Source: Ophelia neglecta (taxonomy: Eukaryota). Taken from it: a stretch of DNA of 64,000 nt. The notes beneath the pieces were generated by a model. That model made no database searches, had not been told where the DNA came from, and worked only from the letters and a program-made list of their open reading frames with translations. The DNA lies in the NCBI GenBank assembly GCA_965285935.1, contig OZ260663.1, positions 75,888,001 through 75,952,000 of the forward strand. Direction: 5' to 3'. A program made the position numbers and the translations under genes. Shown here piece by piece: positions 1 through 31,180 of this stretch (the stretch's first letter is position 1; every line of letters starts with the position of its first letter).

Positions 1-1815
1 CTAATTGACCTACTTTCAAAATCAAGGTCAAACCGTGACATTGAAAATTTTAAATGGCTATATCTCAGCTGTTTACTCACCGATTTCCAGATAATTTGGC
101 ACGGATGTAGCCAGTTAGAAAGTCTTCTGACGAAAATTATTTTATTAACCTACTTTTAAATTCAAGGTCAAACTGTGACATTGAAAATTCAAACGGCTAT
201 ATCTCAGCCGTTTACTGACCGATTTCTGCAAAATTTGGCACGAATGTAGCCAGTAAAAAAGTCTTCTGATCAAAATTATCTAATTGACCTACTTTCAAAA
301 TCAAGGTCAAACCGTGACATTGAAAATTTTAAATGGCTATATCTCAGCTGTTTACTGGCCGATTTCCGCAAAATTTGGCACGGATGTAGCCAGTTAGAAA
401 GTCATCTGACCAAAGTTATCTAATTGACCTACTTTCAAAATCAAGGTCAAACCGTGACATTGAAAATTTTAAATGGCTATATCTCAGCTGTTTACTCACC
501 GATTTCCAGATAATTTGGCACGGATGTAGCCAGTTAGAAAGTCTTCTGACCAAAATTATCTTATTAACCTACTTTTAAATTCAAGGTCAAACTGTGACAT
601 TGAAAATTCAAATGGCTATATCTCAGCCGTTTACTGACCGATTTCTGCAAAATTTGGCACGAATGTAGCCAGTAAGAAAGTCTTCTGATCAAAATTATCT
701 AATTGACCTACTTTCAAAATCAAGGTCAAACCGTGACATTGAAAATTTTAAATGGCTATATCTCAGCTGTTTACTGGCCGATTTCCGCAAAATTTGGCAC
801 GGATGTAGCCAGTTAGAAAGTCTTCTGACCAAAGTTATCTAATTGACCTACTTTCAAAATCAAGGTCAAACCGTGACATTGAAAATTTTAAATGGCTATA
901 TCTCAGCTGTTTACTCACCGATTTCCAGATAATTTGGCACGGATGTAGCCAGTTAGAAAGTCTTCTGACCAAAATTATCTTATTAACCTACTTTTAAATT
1001 CAAGGTCAAACTGTGACATTGAAAATTCAAATGGCTATATCTCAGCCGTTTACGGACCGATTTCTGCAAAATTTGGCACGAATGTAGCCAGTAAGAAAGT
1101 CTTCTGATCAAAATTATCTAATTGACCTACTTTCAAAATCAAGGTCAAACCGTGACATTGAAAATTTTAAATGGCTATATCTCAGCTGTTTACTGGCCGA
1201 TTTCCGCAAAATTTGGCACGGATGTAGCCAGTTAGAAAGTCTTCTGACCAAAGTTATCTAATTGACCTACTTTCAAAATCAAGGTCAAACCGTGACATTG
1301 AAAATTTTAAATGGCTATATCTCAGCTGTTTAATCACCGATTTCCAGATAATTTGGCACGGATGTAGCCAGTTAGAAAGTCTTCTGACCAAAATTATCTT
1401 ATTAACCTACTTTTAAATTCAAGGTCAAACTGTGACATTGAAAATTCAAATGGCTATATCTCAGCCGTTTACGGACCGATTTCTGCAAAATTTGGCACGA
1501 ATGTAGCCAGTAAGAAAGTCTTCTGATCAAAATTATCTAATTGACCTACTTTCAAAATCAAGGTCAAACCGTGACATTGAAAATTTTAAATGCCTGTGTC
1601 TCAGCCATTTATTGAACGATTTTTATAAAATTTGAATATAGCCAGTTAGAAGGTCTTTGGGCTAATCTTATTTGGTTGATTACTTTGAAAATCAAGGTCA
1701 GGCCATGACCTTGATAAGTTCAAATTGCTTTATCTCAGCTGTTTATTGACCGATTTTTGTAAAATTTTGCATTCATGTAGCCAGTTAGAAGCTCTTGATC
1801 GAAATACTTTAGTCA
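1..1815. repeat. Tandem satellite of ~140-bp monomers organised as a 419-bp three-monomer higher-order repeat, probably inside a CLCA intron
   Basis: The A monomer start TAATTGACCTACTTTCAAAATCAAGGTCA recurs at 2, 421, 840 and 1259 (period 419 = 140+139+140). Diagnostic variants are A 'tttactcaccgatttccagat', B 'ttattaacctacttttaaattc' and C 'tttactggccgatttccgca'. Monomers are degenerate from ~1590 to 1815. Confidence 0.97.
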
Positions 1816-11507: not shown

Positions 11508-14261
11508 TGATGTACCTGTTTAATTTATAAAAATAAATAACATAACAATAATGCTATCATTTATAAACAAAGTAATTGCTTAAACAGTTTTTTCCTTATT
11601 GTTCTAAAGAACCTAGAGGAAACCAAGTATAATCCGATATAAAATGATTGACCAAGACATACCTGACAGCCAGTATATGAAGGGCAACAATACTAATATG
11701 TGCTGATTGAAGTGTATGGACTTTCAAACTTACCAATAATCAGAACGATTGTGGCCTATCGTTTGTTGTCTATTTTTTTTTGCATATCGGTTATCGCCTG
11801 CTAGTTTTGTCGATGTTTTGGTCACTTGTAAACACCTGACAAAGTTTAATCAAACGAAATGACACGACATGTTTGCATATTCGCCATAGGAAATACAGTA
11901 CTTTAAAGCTCTGGGATTATAAGTATGGCATAATGACATGTATGGCAACATCATAGTAAAATATGATATATACATGTATATATGTATAATATGTTTATAT
12001 TAAAAATTTGGGTAGCTGCTGCATTATTGGTTCATTTGAGAGTTTAATATCTTTGTGGTTTTACAGCCCCGGTCGATTGACGAGGACCGCTGGAATCTGC
12101 CTAGAAGTATTCTCCCATAAATGTTCCACTCAAATAGTAAATGGACATGGGACTAAAGAAATTCTGTTCATACTGATTTTGGCAGAGGAGGAGCTTTTTT
12201 ACCTCCCTGAATCCCTGCTCTCCGACACAGGGTTAGTATGAGGCCAGTCTAATCAGGAACATAACCATGTATATACATGTAACTTTAATTTATATCAATT
12301 TCATAAAAAACATTGTTTTTACTGGATGGCCCTATCAGATGTGCTCTTTTTCATAGTGGTCAGATATGTACGTAACATGGTATATGTATATGAAAGTACA
12401 AATAATTCCTAGTAAAAACTCGGACCGACCAAATTAACACGGAAAACAATTAATGCGCTCTGACTGAAAGTATCTAACAAGTCTAGCTGGCTCTTTATCT
12501 ATCATTTAACATAGCTCGGTTGAATTCGTGTTGATTGGATTGCCCAACTTCGTGACTTAGATCTCATCGCAATCTGTGCCCTTCGGTATCGATGTTCTGA
12601 TCATGATAGAAACTTCAAATATATCTATTCCATGGTACTGTGTCATGGCTACGCAACTTAAAACATCAACAAAGTAATCCTGTTAACAGATAATAAGGAT
12701 TAAGGGATGAACTAAACGGCACACATGTGTCAATCACTCTTATTTACAAGATTAGCCTTATCGTCTTATACAGAAAACAGTGCAAAATGTTTGACTGATA
12801 AACTGACGTTGTCGTTGATGACAGCTATCAGCGGCTTTCCGAAAAAGGAAGCTTTAATTTGGCTATGGCTATGTGATATGCGATAAAAGATTATTGATGT
12901 TGGTTAGATTATTATAGGTTTTCTACTTTAGTAGATGTGGCTTATCACGAAACTAAATTAATAGAGCGGGTTTAAGTTTAACATTATATGTGATCGGAGA
13001 GGCTAGTTAGTCAACAGGCATAATTATTTATTATTATATAAATGTAGGCCTATAATCATTTATACATGATGGCAGCCTCAATGGGAGTTAGCCAAGTAAC
13101 CTAAGATAATACTGGGAGTCAATGACAAGTATTTGGGTAGTTATGGGGTTGTATGTAGCCAGAACAGTATACGGATATACCTTTTTATACAAAGAGAATC
13201 TGCTCTGGTCTCGGTGACATTTTTGTCCTGAATAAACAATTTTATCTTGTTATTTTTTTCGCACGCAATTGAGCCTTCTTTATCTGCATCGGTTCTGCAG
13301 GGGCCGGAAATACTACATTATTCAAAACCTCTATGCGTCATTCCGATTTTACCTTAAAAATAATCTGGTAGCGCGGCCTTCACCTACCAGTCTAAAACAT
13401 ATTAAGAGCCTAGCTAGCACTTCGATCAGTCCATTAATATAATAAGGCTATGAAATCGCCATTGTGATTTAAAAATTAACATTTTATAAATAAACAAAAA
13501 TAGAAGCTAGTCAATATCCAACAAGTTAATCGTGTTAAAGGCGTCTGTTTTTATTAGTGTCGGTTCTGAATTGATGGGAGAACATTCGGAAATCATTCTA
13601 GATCCACGATTTACATGAGTTGGCAGGGATTTTTTGGTTCCCACAAGATTAACTAAGGTTTTTTTACTCAGGGGAAAGGGTTCAGGTCTTAACTATATAA
13701 TTAACGTAAACTATTACCAAGTATTACGAAATACGTGTGTCCTCAAACTACATTTTGTTTACTTTTATGGTAATTTTAATTCATATTGTATATAGGCACC
13801 ACAAAATTTAAATATTTGTAAAGGCAATATCCCCCTCTTTAGCCATTATTGTAAAAGGTGAACTAGGCCTGGTAAATTAACCAAACGGAATCATTCTGGT
13901 AATGGAATGAACAGGCTTAGTTATATCGGCTCATGGCGTATAAGACATAGCAAGGATATCCATTTCCTCAATTTTTATTTTGCTTATTTTCATTCCATGT
14001 TCTTTTATTTGCCTTCATTTCTCATTGAATAGTAAGTCACATTTTTCATTAATAAACGTTGCTCTCGTATTGATGTGCCCGTTGTATATAGGCATGAAGA
14101 TATAGTTCAAATAAATTTAATTTGATTGATTTGACTTGATGTAGGCCTACATATCCCTCATTGGCATTAAATTAGATATTTAGTAGCTAATGTTTTTTTC
14201 ATGATTAATTTGTTATTATATAGGGCTAAATAATATTGGAAATTACTTTTTTTTAAGATAC

Positions 14262-14422
14262 AAAAAGGTATGGGTCCCACTGTATTGGACGGGCTACCGA
14301 ACGCCGCCTATTCACAGGCGCGATCCCACTACTGCTCGACACGGAGACTTTTGCCTGCTGCGTTTCCGCCCTGGGCCGGTACGTCTCTCCTTAGACAACC
14401 TGGTACCCCTGGACTCCTCCGA
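14262..14422 (-). pseudogene. 7SL (SRP) RNA copy lacking its 5' 142 nt
   Basis: Identical to 30807-30967 of the full 7SL gene and ends in a T5 terminator. The junction is at CCGA (14419-14422), beyond which the sequence resembles the upstream flank of the full gene. Confidence 0.9.
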
Positions 14423-15341
14423 CAACGCATCTTTAAGTGGTCTATTCTATACTGAGTTGGTCTACAACATATGTGGGATGATAACCTGTTCCTCGCCGAA
14501 CGAAAAGATAGGGTGTTTTGCGGCACAATTTTCAGATAAAACCTTATACTGCCCGAGTCTCAGCTTTTGCTTCAGTGATACATTGTCAAAAGTAATTGGT
14601 ATCAGTACACTTGTTTAATACAAATGCCGGTTCTTTTGTACTCTACAGGCTATCCATTTTCCATTGGTGGCCATTATGACATTTGTCTCAATTGCGTACA
14701 TTTCGACCGTTTCGGCCATTTGCTGCTTAACTGTAAAAATGTAATGTATACATAATATAATAATTTCACGGAAGCAAGCGTTTTTATTCTTCACAAATTA
14801 CGATAAAAGCGACCGGGTAACAGCGGGCTATGAAGAGTGCATCACGAAACTCGAACAATCCCATTGTCATATTAACAAAATTGGAAATAACATTTCTATT
14901 CAGCGAAATTCTTTGAAAAAGTTACTATCGGTGGGAACTTAGTACTACGCTCTGTGCACTGCTCCCATTTAATTTGCATTATATAGATTGTCCGGACATA
15001 CAGTAATGAAATAGCTTTATAAATGCACAGATTTACAATAGTGTGTTATTCCATTGCCATCAGTAATTTTGGTTTTCTGTTTCACCATGATTAAGCGCTT
15101 GTTCTGCATGTTTACTACTTCAACACAGCGACATGCTCACTTTCCATGCCCAACATACCTTACCCACCCTGCCCACCTATCCGAACTCATTTGAACATTC
15201 TTCAACATACCCCCCATTCACAGTAATTAAAACTATAGAGAAACCATCGAAATCACCAAGGGTTTTATTTAGATACAGATATAATTGTTACACAAACTAA
15301 TAGTGGTTTGTTTTCCTTTAAAGGTAAATGACACGATAGTC

Positions 15342-21300: not shown

Positions 21301-24300
21301 TTTTAAACTTTTTCATAAACAAGCTTTTTTGTAAATTTGTTATTATAGAAAGTTGTGCTAGAAACATTTTTTAACCAAACAACTGAACTAACAACATAAT
21401 GCTAAGATTGTTGGAACGCATATCCATAAGCAATAAAATTTAAATCGTTTCAAAATCGCATGTTGTTTGCCTTTAGGCAATAGCTGGCACACTTATACGA
21501 TTACCTGGATATGGAAAGTAGAACCACTTTGAATGGCGAAGACTTTCCAATTTGACATCTGTTCTGGCCTTATAATAAGGATGACTTGGATCATTTGGAA
21601 ATGTGTCTGTTACTGTCAGTATGTAACATAGTAACCAAGGCACAACTAGGGCTATCAGTTTCTAGAGTTAAAGAAAATCAATCACAGATCTGTATAGGTA
21701 ATTTGGAACCAAAATTTGATATGGCACAATCCGAGTCTATAGAAGGAAACAATGTTTAGGGGTTTCCTGAAGATACACAATTTGTGGTTCATATGTTTGG
21801 TAATAACTTCCTTTTTGCATATGAAATTTGACAGAGTAGTGGTCCATAAAACACACAAAATATGTCATTTGTATATTGAATGACCATCCATTCTTAAGCA
21901 AATGTATATCATTAACTTACTGGAAATAACCTAAATAAATAATACTTCTCCCCGCGTTTGAAACCATCTCTCTTGTTGCAGGTTGGCAAAGGAACCTGTA
22001 CATCTCTGAGGCCAATTGCACAAACTATAACAATCGTGGCAGTTCTGGAAACAAATATAGTGTGTTATTCACAATGAACACTAAGACTGAAACCGACAAC
22101 ATACATGCATTAGCATAGATATAAACGTTTATCATAAGATCCATTGATTGATTTATTTTCGTTACAACAATACAAATAAGCATATAAAAATTTTGTTAAA
22201 CAACTGTGCCTTAAAAATATATTAATCAGGGAGCATCAGCTATACATAGCTATCCTTATAACAGTATATTCGCAGAAAGTTACAAAGTACCAAATTGTAT
22301 GCAAATGAGAATAGTAAAAAAAATAACATTATCTGTTTTGTCAGCAAAAGGTACTAATCATTTTACAATATAAAAATAACATGATTTCGAGGGAGTTATA
22401 CTTTTTTAGCGGCACTCGGATAATCATTAGCGCCCGAAGCCCAGGAGAGGGTGCTAATGACAATGAAGGGCTTAATATCGTTGATGGAAGGACGCTAATA
22501 TAGCTCAGCTAAAGGAACTTTTTTACTAATATTGTCATCTTCAACATTACTTTACTGGTACAGGTAAGTCGAAAAAAACAATAATACACTGGTTTGATAA
22601 CAGAAATCTTTATTTGTATTGTATTGACTCATGACTAAACTAGCGCACCGGTGTCCTAGCTGCTTCCTCCCCTGGGTACTCCCGCCCTTGCATACCCTCG
22701 ACCCTACATACCCTCTCCCCTGCATTACAAATACTACTATCGCTCGACGGCAAGTTGCCTGCAGGTAGCTTTCATAAACAGCCCGACCACCTTATGTGTA
22801 TCTCAATCATGATAAGCAGTCACTCATTGTCATGGGCAAGAATGTGTTTGGTTTTTAATGAATTTACGATCTTCGAAAGGAAGCTGTGTAAATAACACTA
22901 AATAAGAATCCAGACAGTAGCTGCTATAACTTACAATATGGCGATAACCCACTGGTGCTGGGATGAGTTGATGACTGCTGGGTAGAGAGAGAGACCGACG
23001 AGAGAGATGGCGGGAGCGATGGTCAAAGGTCCTACGTAGGGGATGAGCAAGCCGAACACTCCGGTCAGACCCAGAAGTACTTGAATGGCTGCCGCCACCA
23101 TAAGAGACCCAGATACCTGAGGGTTTTAAACTTATACCATTTCAAGCATCTAAATTTGGTTTCGACTTAATAGCTTATCTGCCTCTTATTCCATTCCAGT
23201 TAATTTATCATTAGTCATACTGAANNNNNNNNNNNNNNNNNNNNNNNNNNNNNNNNNNNNNNNNNNNNNNNNNNNNNNNNNNNNNNNNNNNNNNNNNNNN
23301 NNNNNNNNNNNNNNNNNNNNNNNNNNNNNNNNNNNNNNNNNNNNNNNNNNNNNNNNNNNNNNNNNNNNNNNNNNNNNNNNNNNNNNNNNNNNNNNNNNNN
23401 NNNNNNNNNNNNNNNNNNNNNNNNNNNNNNNNNNNNNNCTTGAATTCCATGGTGGCAACTCATCGCTCATTGTTTTATTGAGGTAAGCTGGAATATATGA
23501 AATTACGAAAAGTCGCACAGGATCTAGTAGTTTGTTAAGAAACTGAGCGTAACTTGGAATGCTTTTAAAACTTCTTTTAGTTTACTATCATATTCTTTTT
23601 TTAAACAAAGGTGCGATGGAATAAAGTTGAATATATCGTACCATCTTCACTGGGACATTTATATTTATCGCTCGACATAGCAGCAAATAGTGGGGCAATG
23701 AACAAAAACGACATTCCTTGGACGATTGGCAACCTGAGAAAAAAACCGAAGTTAATTTGTCTATGACCGATAAACATACAAAACGCTAAAACAAAAATTT
23801 GGTTTTGACTTATATCCGCGCGACATCTGATTAAGATTTGTACAATTTATAACATGGAGTCCGATAAAGTAGTTTAATTTAATGTTACAAGAAACAATAT
23901 TTGGCATATTTATCTAGGCTTGACAAAATGCAATAAATAGATCCATACCACGGACACATTGAGTCTATATAACTATATATAAATAAAACCGTTTGCATTG
24001 GGTTGGGGCTAGGGTGGGATTGGTCCGGGTGGGGGTGGGGGGACGGGGGTTGAGCTTGGCTTCATTGAAACTGTTCTGGTGTGATTGCTTTGATGGTAAA
24101 TATTGATGCGGGTGTCGCCAATATTTTATTTTGAAGCAAAAAATTGTCTACCTTATTCCCAAAGAAATCTGCAGTATTGTCCCAATCCCGCAAAGGATCA
24201 CACTACTTGCCACCAACTCCGCTAGGAAACCATAATCGTCCCCTCCACAAACCGCAGAATGGACCAGCGATGCAAGCACAACCTTCCCAGGAGAGTTCAT

Positions 24301-30804: not shown

Positions 30805-30811
30805 AAAAAAA
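30805..30811 (-). terminator. RNA polymerase III oligo-T terminator of 7SL
   Basis: T7 run immediately after ...GGGACCCATACC. Confidence 0.9.
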
Positions 30812-31106
30812 GGTATGGGTCCCACTGTATTGGACGGGCTACCGAACGCCGCCTATTCACAGGCGCGATCCCACTACTGCTCGACACGGAGACTTTTGCC
30901 TGCTGCGTTTCCGCCCTGGGCCGGTACGTCTCTCCTTAGACAACCTGGTACCCCTGGACTCCTCCGAAGGCACCATATTGATGCCGAGCTTAGCGCGGAC
31001 ACCCGATCGACATAGAACGACGAGCGACAGGAACCCCGCCCTCAAGCCGTCCACCACACCCGGCCTCCAAGTAGCTGGATTACAGGAGAGCGCCGCCACT
31101 CCCGGC
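30808..31106 (-). ncRNA. RN7SL: 7SL signal recognition particle RNA gene, full length (~300 nt)
   Basis: The minus strand begins GCCGGGAGTGGCGGCGCTCTCCTGTAATCCAGCTAC (Alu domain). It contains GATCGGGTGTCCGCGCTAAGCTCGGCATCAATATGGTG, the helix 6 GGAG tetraloop, helix 8 GCCCAGGGCGGAAACGCAGCAGGC and CAGTAGTGGGATCGCGCCTGTGAATAG, all closely matching metazoan 7SL. Confidence 0.98.
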
Positions 31107-31129
31107 CGACAACTCAAGATAAAGTGGTC

Positions 31130-31180
31130 TTAAATACACGAAGCAGGCCATGTAGGCAGGTTACCTGTCACTCGCAGTAC
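31130..31180 (-). promoter_or_regulatory. Upstream Pol III promoter elements of 7SL: TATA-like TATTTAA at about -30 and a PSE-like block at -44 to -74
   Basis: TATTTAA at 31136-31130. The block 31150-31180 matches 14471-14501, upstream of the second 7SL copy, at 22/31 nt. Confidence 0.55.

What the first reader, a model, noticed from the sequence alone, without database searches (positions are those of the whole stretch)
14262..14501. Second 7SL locus that lost its 5' half but kept an upstream promoter-like region and terminator: a possible minimal S-domain SRP RNA
Seen in sequence: 14262-14422 is identical to the 3' part of the intact 7SL (30807-30967). In the intact gene CCGA occurs at 30964-30967 and at 31106-31109, and this copy is exactly the product of deleting the 142 nt between them. 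Beyond the junction the flank matches the intact gene's upstream DNA (cgacaacgcatctttaagtggtct vs cgacaactcaagataaagtggtct, 19/24). A TATA-like TATAGAA lies in a similar position, and a second block matches at 22/31 (14471-14501 vs 31150-31180). It is therefore a genomic duplicate rather than a retrocopy: no poly(A), diverged flanks, identical body. Established: helix 8 binds SRP54, and the 5' Alu part mediates elongation arrest and carries the internal Pol III boxes. Inference: if the promoter is external, a ~157-nt RNA would be made that has intact helix 8 and the helix 6 GGAG loop but no complete Alu domain. It could act as a 4.5S-like minimal SRP RNA or an SRP54 decoy. Otherwise this is a very recent deletion in a concertedly evolving 7SL family.
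Basis: partly seen in the sequence, partly recalled or inferred. Interest (0 to 1): 0.75.

Follow-up and report, generated by a model that had tools for sequence, protein, structure and literature searches.

The report
Broken spare copy of 7SL gene
One of this invertebrate's fifteen 7SL (signal recognition particle RNA) loci has lost its first 142 bases in a small DNA deletion; what remains cannot fold into the working core of the particle, so it is most likely an ordinary dead gene copy.

Summary
Window 14262-14422 is identical (161/161) to the 3' part of the intact minus-strand 7SL gene at 30809-31106. CCGA stands at both breakpoints, and the upstream flank resembles 7SL promoter DNA.

Contigs built from reads of three runs of one sample carry both edges of the short copy at single-copy depth, with no branch to a full-length allele. 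It is not an assembly error.

The genome holds 14 full-length 7SL genes and only this short one. There is no 5'-half partner.

The "minimal S-domain RNA" reading fails on anatomy. The deletion removes the Alu domain and the 5' strands of helices 5 and 6. Only 15 of 100 native pairs keep both partners and 73 are orphaned. Helix 8 is predicted to form with probability 0.02, against 0.80 in the full RNA. Rfam scores the copy 60.9 bits, below the threshold of 70.

The flank keeps a TATA-like box at -32, a U6/7SK-like upstream motif displaced by 8 nt, and a T5 terminator. Some transcription is therefore possible, but no RNA run of this animal was listed.

Best reading: a microhomology deletion in a homogenised gene family.

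The parts
14262..14266 (-). T5 run, the Pol III terminator-like end of the short copy
   Evidence: Reads TTTTT on the minus strand. Full-length copies end in T5 to T11.
14267..14343 (-). 3' strand of helix 5 (7SL positions about 219-295), left without its pairing partner
   Evidence: Identical to the intact gene. Its 5' partner lies in the deleted 142 nt.
14344..14387 (-). Helix 8 (the SRP54-binding hairpin), the only helix with both strands kept
   Evidence: Mapped from the Rfam structure. Its 11 canonical pairs are predicted at mean probability about 0.02 in the short RNA and about 0.9 in the full RNA.
14396..14418 (-). 3' strand of helix 6, the GGAG loop letters and one A; the 5' strand of helix 6 is missing
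   Evidence: In one search cmscan could only pair this strand with promoter DNA, through many non-standard pairs.
14419..14422 (-). TCGG microhomology at the deletion junction; the G at 14419 corresponds both to +1 and to position 143 of the intact gene
   Evidence: The junction word occurs once in the genome. Contigs from reads run 14393-14900 unbranched.
14420..14426 (-). GTTGTCG block at -7..-1, shared with 12 of 14 full-length 7SL genes
14435..14451 (-). TATA-like TATAGAA (-32..-26) followed by GACCACTT (-23..-16)
   Evidence: The same blocks stand at the same distance in L003, L004 and L014, and GACCACTT also in L009. U6 and 7SK have TATA at -31 and -34.
14482..14489 (-). Upstream ACAGGTTA motif (PSE-like) at -70, 8 nt further out than in intact copies
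   Evidence: The motif AC[AT]G[GT]T[AT][AG] lies at -62 in 7SK and in four 7SL copies, at -60 in one 7SL copy and at -59 in U6. The motif was defined from these same sequences.
30809..31106 (-). Intact 7SL gene used as reference
   Evidence: RF00017, 272.7 bits, model 1-299. TATTTAA at 31130-31136 and ACAGGTAA at 31161-31168.

Best explanation
This is a real DNA-level remnant of a 7SL (SRP RNA) gene and most likely has no SRP function.

How it arose. An old member of the chromosome-5 7SL cluster, with its own diverged flanks, lost 142 bp between two TCGG repeats. One repeat spans the transcription start (-3..+1) and the other lies at positions 140-143. That is the signature of microhomology-mediated end joining or replication slippage.

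What is lost and kept. The deletion removes the Alu domain (helices 2-4), any internal promoter boxes, and the 5' strands of helices 5 and 6. It leaves helix 8, two orphaned strands, the upstream promoter-like DNA and a T5 terminator.

Why the body is still perfect. The remaining 161 nt match the family because the family is homogenised or strongly constrained, and because the deletion is recent or the remnant is still converted by its neighbours.

Expected outcome (inference). The locus may still be transcribed weakly by RNA polymerase III; I put that at roughly even odds. Any RNA would be about 155 nt, identical to a sub-fragment of normal 7SL, and unable to build an S domain.
For: Shown:
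- The 161/161 identity and the CCGA/TCGG repeats at both breakpoints. A microhomology of 4 nt or more is expected at about 1.6% of random junctions.
- Contigs X1 rec6, X2 rec14 and X3 rec23 run unbranched over 14393-14900 at flank depth. Rec1, rec9 and rec17 run over 13900-14291.
- BLAST of the whole genome scored 15 of 15 candidates: 14 full-length genes plus this one, with no 5'-half copy. The junction word is unique.
- Family bodies differ from the window's intact copy at 0-11 of 298 sites, and 5 of 14 have a 3' part identical to the remnant. Flanks are only 65.5% alike over 174 nt at best, and unalignable downstream.
- Rfam gives 60.9 bits, below the gathering score of 70.
- Only 15 of 100 native canonical pairs are kept and 73 are orphaned. 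The mean probability of the kept native pairs is 0.019, against 0.80 in the full RNA. Forcing helix 8 costs 12.5 kcal/mol. The fold is no better than shuffles, with z = 0.00 and 0.14.

From papers:
- Mammalian 7SL genes use internal A and B boxes together with upstream elements (passages of PMC7279448). Any such boxes would lie in the part deleted here.
Against: - The remnant is a tidy transcription unit. The deletion starts exactly at the predicted start site. A TATA-like box sits at the normal distance (-32), the upstream motif is kept letter for letter as in L003/L004, and a T5 terminator follows.
- U6, 7SK and 7SL of this genome share that upstream motif and a TATA at similar distances. 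The promoter may therefore be fully external and survive the deletion.
- There are no substitutions in 161 nt although the flanks are old. Selection on the remnant would also give this.
- S-domain fragments of human 7SL are reported to interfere with SRP assembly (passages of the review PMC8185352).
- Energy models predict the loop-rich helix 8 poorly, and proteins could rescue it.
- No RNA data for this animal were available, so expression is neither shown nor excluded.
Confidence: 0.8

Rival explanations
1. The locus is an active gene with an external Pol III promoter. Its roughly 155-nt RNA presents helix 8 and acts as a decoy for SRP54 (or SRP19), or as a dominant-negative competitor during SRP assembly.
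For: - TATA-like box at -32, upstream motif, GTTGTCG at -7..-1 and a T5 terminator are all kept.
- The helix 8 sequence is intact.
- 0 changes in 161 nt despite old flanks.
- Dicer-made 7SL fragments are reported as dominant-negative regulators of SRP (passages of PMC8185352).
Against: - The upstream motif is 38 nt from the TATA start, against 28-32 nt in U6, 7SK and the intact 7SL copies that have a TATA-like box (L003, L004 and L014 from the sequences).
- Helix 8 is predicted not to form in the short RNA (probability 0.02), and the fold is no better than shuffles.
- The helix 6 hairpin that SRP19 needs is gone.
- It is a single locus with no recurrence in the genome.
- The identity of the body is equally explained by a recent deletion or by gene conversion.
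Confidence: 0.08
2. Assembly artefact: the true locus holds a full-length gene and the assembler collapsed it.
For: The body is a multi-copy repeat. Its contig depth is about 8-33 times that of the flanks, which is the kind of place where assemblers err.
Against: - In 3 of 3 runs of the organism, the unique flank continues without a branch into 30 letters of the S-domain part, at flank depth. A full-length allele would place Alu-domain letters there instead.
- Caveats: the three runs are one sample and may be the source of the assembly. The overlap of 30 letters is one short of the tool's own 31-letter rule for bridging. Contigs also drop rare variants.
Confidence: 0.02
3. Retrocopy of a 5'-truncated 7SL RNA, or one half of a split or permuted SRP RNA gene whose partner lies elsewhere.
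For: - 5'-truncated 7SL retropseudogenes are common in mammals (recalled, not from a call).
- Permuted SRP RNA genes exist in Thermoproteus (PMC4731332; title and start of abstract only).
- An A8 run begins 7 nt past the T-run.
Against: - Upstream DNA, which is not part of the RNA, is homologous to 7SL promoter flanks right up to the junction.
- The A-run does not adjoin the RNA end.
- The only flanking direct repeat is 18/22 in AT-rich DNA.
- No 5'-half-only copy exists among 15 of 15 scored BLAST candidates.
Confidence: 0.02

Closest known systems
7SL pseudogenes in multicopy 7SL families (in mammals mostly truncated retropseudogenes; recalled, not from a call)
   Same: A partial copy of 7SL beside functional full-length genes, scoring below the Rfam threshold.
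   Different: It arose by an internal DNA deletion at a microhomology, not by retroposition. It keeps promoter-like upstream DNA and the terminator, and its body is still identical to the live genes.
S-domain fragments of human 7SL made by processing: 7SLrem (111 nt), S114, sRN7SL (68 nt) and Dicer fragments (passages of review PMC8185352)
   Same: An RNA that would contain helix 8 without the Alu domain. Some such fragments are reported to interfere with SRP assembly.
   Different: Those fragments are cut from full-length, correctly folded 7SL and keep both strands of the S-domain helices. Here the truncation would be encoded in the gene and would leave helices 5 and 6 single-stranded.
Bacterial 4.5S RNA, the minimal SRP RNA
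   Same: No Alu domain, and the helix 8 motif is present.
   Different: 4.5S is one long hairpin in which both strands of helix 5 close helix 8. The remnant has 32 nt on the 5' side of helix 8 and 77 nt on the 3' side, and these are not complementary.
Gene-external (type 3, U6/7SK-like) Pol III promoters
   Same: An upstream motif near -60 plus a TATA near -30 is shared by U6, 7SK and several 7SL genes of this genome. The remnant has both motifs.
   Different: In the remnant the motif-to-TATA distance is 38 nt, not 28-32 nt. Mammalian 7SL genes use internal A and B boxes with a TATA-like box and a CRE (PMC7279448). Whether this animal's 7SL needs internal elements is unknown.

Membership tests
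Metazoa_SRP (Rfam RF00017), a functional 7SL gene | Covariance-model score at or above the gathering score of 70 bits | tested here: not met
   60.9 bits over model positions 124-224 only. The intact neighbour scores 272.7 bits.
Metazoa_SRP (Rfam RF00017), a functional 7SL gene | Alu domain (helices 2, 3 and 4) and a paired helix 5 | tested here: not met
   Positions up to 142/143 are deleted. 73 of 100 native pairs lose their 5' partner.
SRP S domain | Helix 6 hairpin with a GGAG tetraloop (SRP19 site) | tested here: not met
   Only the loop letters and the 3' strand remain. The requirement comes from passages of PMC4615810.
SRP S domain | Helix 8 with its conserved loops (SRP54 M-domain site) | tested here: inconclusive
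   The sequence is fully present and identical. It is predicted to pair at 0.02 in the short RNA against about 0.9 in the full RNA. Prediction only.
4.5S-like minimal SRP RNA | Helix 8 closed by both strands of helix 5 in a single hairpin | tested here: not met
   The 5' strand of helix 5 is deleted. The minimum-free-energy fold is unrelated to the native one, with z = 0.00 and 0.14.
Gene-external Pol III promoter (U6/7SK type of this genome) | TATA-like box about 30 nt before the start | tested here: met
   TATAGAA at -32. U6 has TATA at -31, 7SK at -34 and the intact 7SL at -30.
Gene-external Pol III promoter (U6/7SK type of this genome) | Upstream motif near -60 at a fixed distance from the TATA | tested here: inconclusive
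   The motif is present but at -70. The distance to the TATA start is 38 nt, against 28-32 nt elsewhere. The motif was defined from the same sequences.
Gene-external Pol III promoter (U6/7SK type of this genome) | Transcription actually starts there | not testable with these tools
   No RNA run of this animal was listed. Any RNA would also be identical to part of normal 7SL.
7SL retropseudogene | Poly(A) adjoining the RNA 3' end, target-site duplications, and no homology upstream of the RNA start | tested here: not met
   The A8 run does not adjoin the RNA end. The only flanking repeat is a weak 18/22. Upstream homology to 7SL promoters is present.
Microhomology-mediated deletion | A short direct repeat at both breakpoints in the intact form, with one copy left at the junction | tested here: met
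   TCGG at -3..+1 and at 140..143, with one TCGG at the junction.

The most novel reading that the evidence does not exclude
The deletion created, by accident, a clean U6-type Pol III gene. Its roughly 155-nt product carries the SRP54-binding helix 8 plus long single strands complementary to the 5' half of normal 7SL. It would work as a gene-encoded damper of SRP assembly, by titrating SRP54 or by pairing with nascent 7SL. That would be a heritable counterpart of the Dicer-made 7SL fragments reported in human cells.
Probability: 0.06. Interest if true: 0.6.

Novelty: new member of a known kind. Interest (0 to 1): 0.2.

Why it matters
As it stands the finding matters little. It is one dead or dying copy in a 15-member gene family, and it is useful mainly as a warning for annotation: the locus falls just under the Rfam threshold and looks like a gene.

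Two side results are of more interest:
- The 7SL genes of this lophotrochozoan-like animal appear to carry a U6/7SK-type upstream motif plus a TATA box, unlike the mammalian arrangement.
- The family shows strong homogenisation of gene bodies against unrelated flanks.

If the remnant were shown to be transcribed and bound by SRP54, it would be a rare natural experiment on what a helix-8-only RNA does in an animal cell.

Tried and rejected
Assembly collapse: rejected on the read-derived contigs.

Retrocopy: rejected on the promoter homology upstream and on the lack of an adjoining poly(A).

Split or permuted SRP RNA: rejected. BLAST with the whole gene scored 15 of 15 candidates and found no 5'-half copy. 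The junction word occurs once; the 14 one-mismatch hits are the normal internal site of the full-length genes.

Recurrence elsewhere: an exact scan of metagenome contigs for the 25-nt junction gave 0 hits. This says little, because that collection is mostly microbial.

Expression: not testable.
- One search listed no RNA run of organism A.
- The one RNA run laid (X4, a marine metatranscriptome with a 0.07 share of the words) placed 0 contigs.

tRNA genes as possible promoter donors: 0 in the window.

Literature:
- Searches found no paper on a gene-encoded S-domain-only 7SL or on 7SL promoters of lophotrochozoans. This covers only the held open-access library.
- The Arabidopsis work on an external 7SL promoter and the early human work on 7SL pseudogenes and promoters are recalled only. 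One search did not bring them up.
- PMC7245038 and PMC4731332 were seen only as listing and start of abstract.
- PMC7279448, PMC8185352 and PMC4615810 were read as passages.
- No supplementary files were asked for, and no claim here depends on them.

Earlier notes of the scan:
- One search returned two unrelated notes on this window.
- One search found no note on 7SL or SRP.
- One search returned nothing.

Limits of my own tests:
- The upstream motif was defined from the very sequences in which I then counted it. Its chance figure of 0.04 per 120 nt is therefore optimistic.
- The shuffles were mononucleotide shuffles. Those preserved dinucleotides.
- One search had an off-by-one error in the mapping. 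Its pair table is void and was redone.
- I take X1-X3 to be DNA from their even flank depth and the 8-33-fold body depth. Their kind is not on record.

Full report
WHAT IS THERE

The window holds one intact 7SL (SRP RNA) gene on the minus strand, 31106..30809. It matches Rfam RF00017 end to end at 272.7 bits.

The finding's stretch 14262-14422 is identical to 30807-30967 over 161 of 161 bases, and the identity stops sharply at both ends. On the RNA strand the short copy consists of:
- a G that corresponds both to +1 and to position 143;
- positions 144-298 of 7SL;
- a T5 run.

In the intact gene, TCGG stands at -3..+1 and at 140..143. The short copy has one TCGG at the junction, so it is exactly the product of a 142-nt deletion between 4-nt direct repeats. 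Microhomology of that length is expected at about 1.6% of random junctions.

For the second, none of 200 shuffles reached 22.

IS IT REAL DNA?

The look-up of sequencing runs listed three runs of one sample of the organism (X1-X3) that hold 83-90% of the sampled words. It also listed 21 runs with 4-7%. I laid X1-X3 and one RNA run (X4) on 13900-14900.

- In each of X1-X3, one contig (records 6, 14, 23) runs from 14393 to beyond 14900. That is the unique upstream flank plus 30 letters of the S-domain part. It has no branch and lies at the depth of the flank (11.6, 24.2, 38.8).
- Another contig in each run (records 1, 9, 17) covers 13900-14291.
- A full-length allele would put Alu-domain letters next to the flank, and none is seen.

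Caveats:
- The 30-letter overlap is what a 31-word graph gives at a repeat edge. It is one letter short of the tool's own bridging rule.
- The three runs are one sample and may be the source of the assembly.
- Contigs drop rare variants.
- X4 placed nothing.

I take the junction as real and probably present on both haplotypes of that animal.

THE FAMILY

The genome (762 Mb, 223 contigs) has 14 full-length 7SL genes and this one remnant.
- Thirteen of the full-length genes lie within C5:75.74-75.92 Mb.
- Nine of those form a tandem array of about 1.32 kb period.
- The BLAST search scored 15 of 15 candidates, so there is no 5'-half copy and no second truncated form. The junction word is unique.

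Gene bodies differ from the window's intact copy at 0-11 of 298 sites. Five of the 14 have a 3' part identical to the remnant.

Flanks are another matter. The best flank match of the remnant is 65.5% over 174 nt upstream (L004), and nothing aligns downstream. The locus is therefore an old family member whose body was kept like the others by selection or homogenisation. Zero changes in 161 nt means either that the deletion is recent or that neighbours still convert the remnant. These two cannot be told apart with one genome.

PROMOTER

Aligned on the start site, intact copies L003, L004, L009 and L014 carry:
- ACAGGT[AT]A at -62;
- a TATA-like box at -32/-30;
- GACCACTT;
- GTTGTCG at -7..-1, except L014, which reads AATGTCG there. 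GTTGTCG is found in 12 of 14 copies.

The same 8-nt pattern lies at -59 in U6 and at -62 in 7SK, with TATA at -31 and -34. MRP and U2 lack the pattern as I wrote it. I defined the pattern from these same sequences, so its chance figure is optimistic. Even so, the shared position across three unrelated gene families suggests a U6-type external promoter for 7SL in this animal. Mammalian 7SL differs: internal A and B boxes with a TATA-like box and a CRE (passages of PMC7279448).

The remnant keeps TATAGAA at -32, GACCACTT, GTTGTCG and ACAGGTTA. The last lies at -70, which is 38 nt from the TATA start against 28-32 nt elsewhere.

Transcription is therefore possible but not assured. Any internal elements are gone. 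Eight array copies have the motif at -45 and no TATA-like block, so the spacing rules of this promoter are not clear.

WOULD THE RNA BE AN S DOMAIN?

No. I mapped the Rfam structure onto the intact gene. Of its 100 canonical pairs, 15 keep both partners in the short RNA:
- 11 in helix 8;
- 2 at the tip of helix 6;
- 2 in a small hairpin.

Another 73 pairs keep only the 3' partner. The whole 5' strand of helix 6 and the whole 5' strand of helix 5 are deleted.

Further evidence:
- cmscan could align the locus only locally (model 124-224, 60.9 bits, below the threshold of 70), by pairing the helix 6 strand with promoter DNA through many non-standard pairs.
- The short RNA folds no better than shuffles, with z = 0.00 and 0.14.
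- The kept native pairs have a mean probability of 0.019, against 0.80 for the same pairs in the full RNA.
- Forcing helix 8 costs 12.5 kcal/mol.
[quoted passage not shown] Neither site exists here.
- A 4.5S-like hairpin would need both strands of helix 5 and is equally impossible.

What remains conceivable is a helix 8 decoy or a competitor during assembly. The only precedent is processed S-domain fragments of human 7SL (passages of PMC8185352).

VERDICT

The deletion is real, and the mechanism is an ordinary microhomology deletion in a homogenised multigene family. The "minimal S-domain SRP RNA" reading is not supported. Whether the remnant is transcribed is open, because no RNA data of this animal were available (earlier unchecked notes of the scan say the same for other loci).

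I give 0.8 to a remnant with no SRP function and about 0.06-0.08 to a functional short RNA. Interest is low (0.2).

Noticed in passing
G000:C5:75819052-75829926 (loci L001, L005-L013), outside the window: A tandem array of nine full-length 7SL genes with a period of about 1.32 kb. Eight share an identical upstream region in which the ACAGGTAA motif lies at -45 instead of -60/-62 and the TATA-like block is missing (about 15-17 nt shorter than L001). It is unclear whether these copies are active.
   Followed up: partly
L016/L017 (U6), L037/L038 (7SK), L003/L004/L009/L014 (7SL), 120 nt upstream of each gene: U6, 7SK and 7SL share an AC[AT]G[GT]T[AT][AG] motif at -59 to -62 and a TATA or TATA-like box at -30 to -34. 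This suggests a U6-type external promoter for 7SL in this animal, unlike mammals. The motif was defined post hoc.
   Followed up: partly
window 31107-31113, and the same place in the other 7SL loci: GTTGTCG directly before the RNA start is kept in 12 of 14 full-length copies, and in the remnant, despite otherwise diverged flanks.
   Followed up: partly
window 30809-31106, RNA position 113: The window's intact 7SL is the only one of 14 full-length copies with G at position 113. The other 13 have A.
   Followed up: no
G000:C9:7.93-7.99 Mb and G000:C7:10.50-10.56 Mb: Large tandem arrays of U6 (at least 36 matches, period about 1.59 kb) and U2 (48 matches, period 783 bp).
   Followed up: no
window 14229-14250 and 14874-14895: A 22-nt direct repeat (18/22) brackets the remnant and its promoter at a spacing of 645 nt. 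It is probably chance in AT-rich DNA.
   Followed up: no
window 14207, 14600, 14616: Read-derived contigs differ from the assembly at three flank sites. At 14207, X1 agrees with the assembly while X2 and X3 do not. This fits heterozygosity in the sampled animal.
   Followed up: no
window 23225-23438: A run of 214 N.
   Followed up: no
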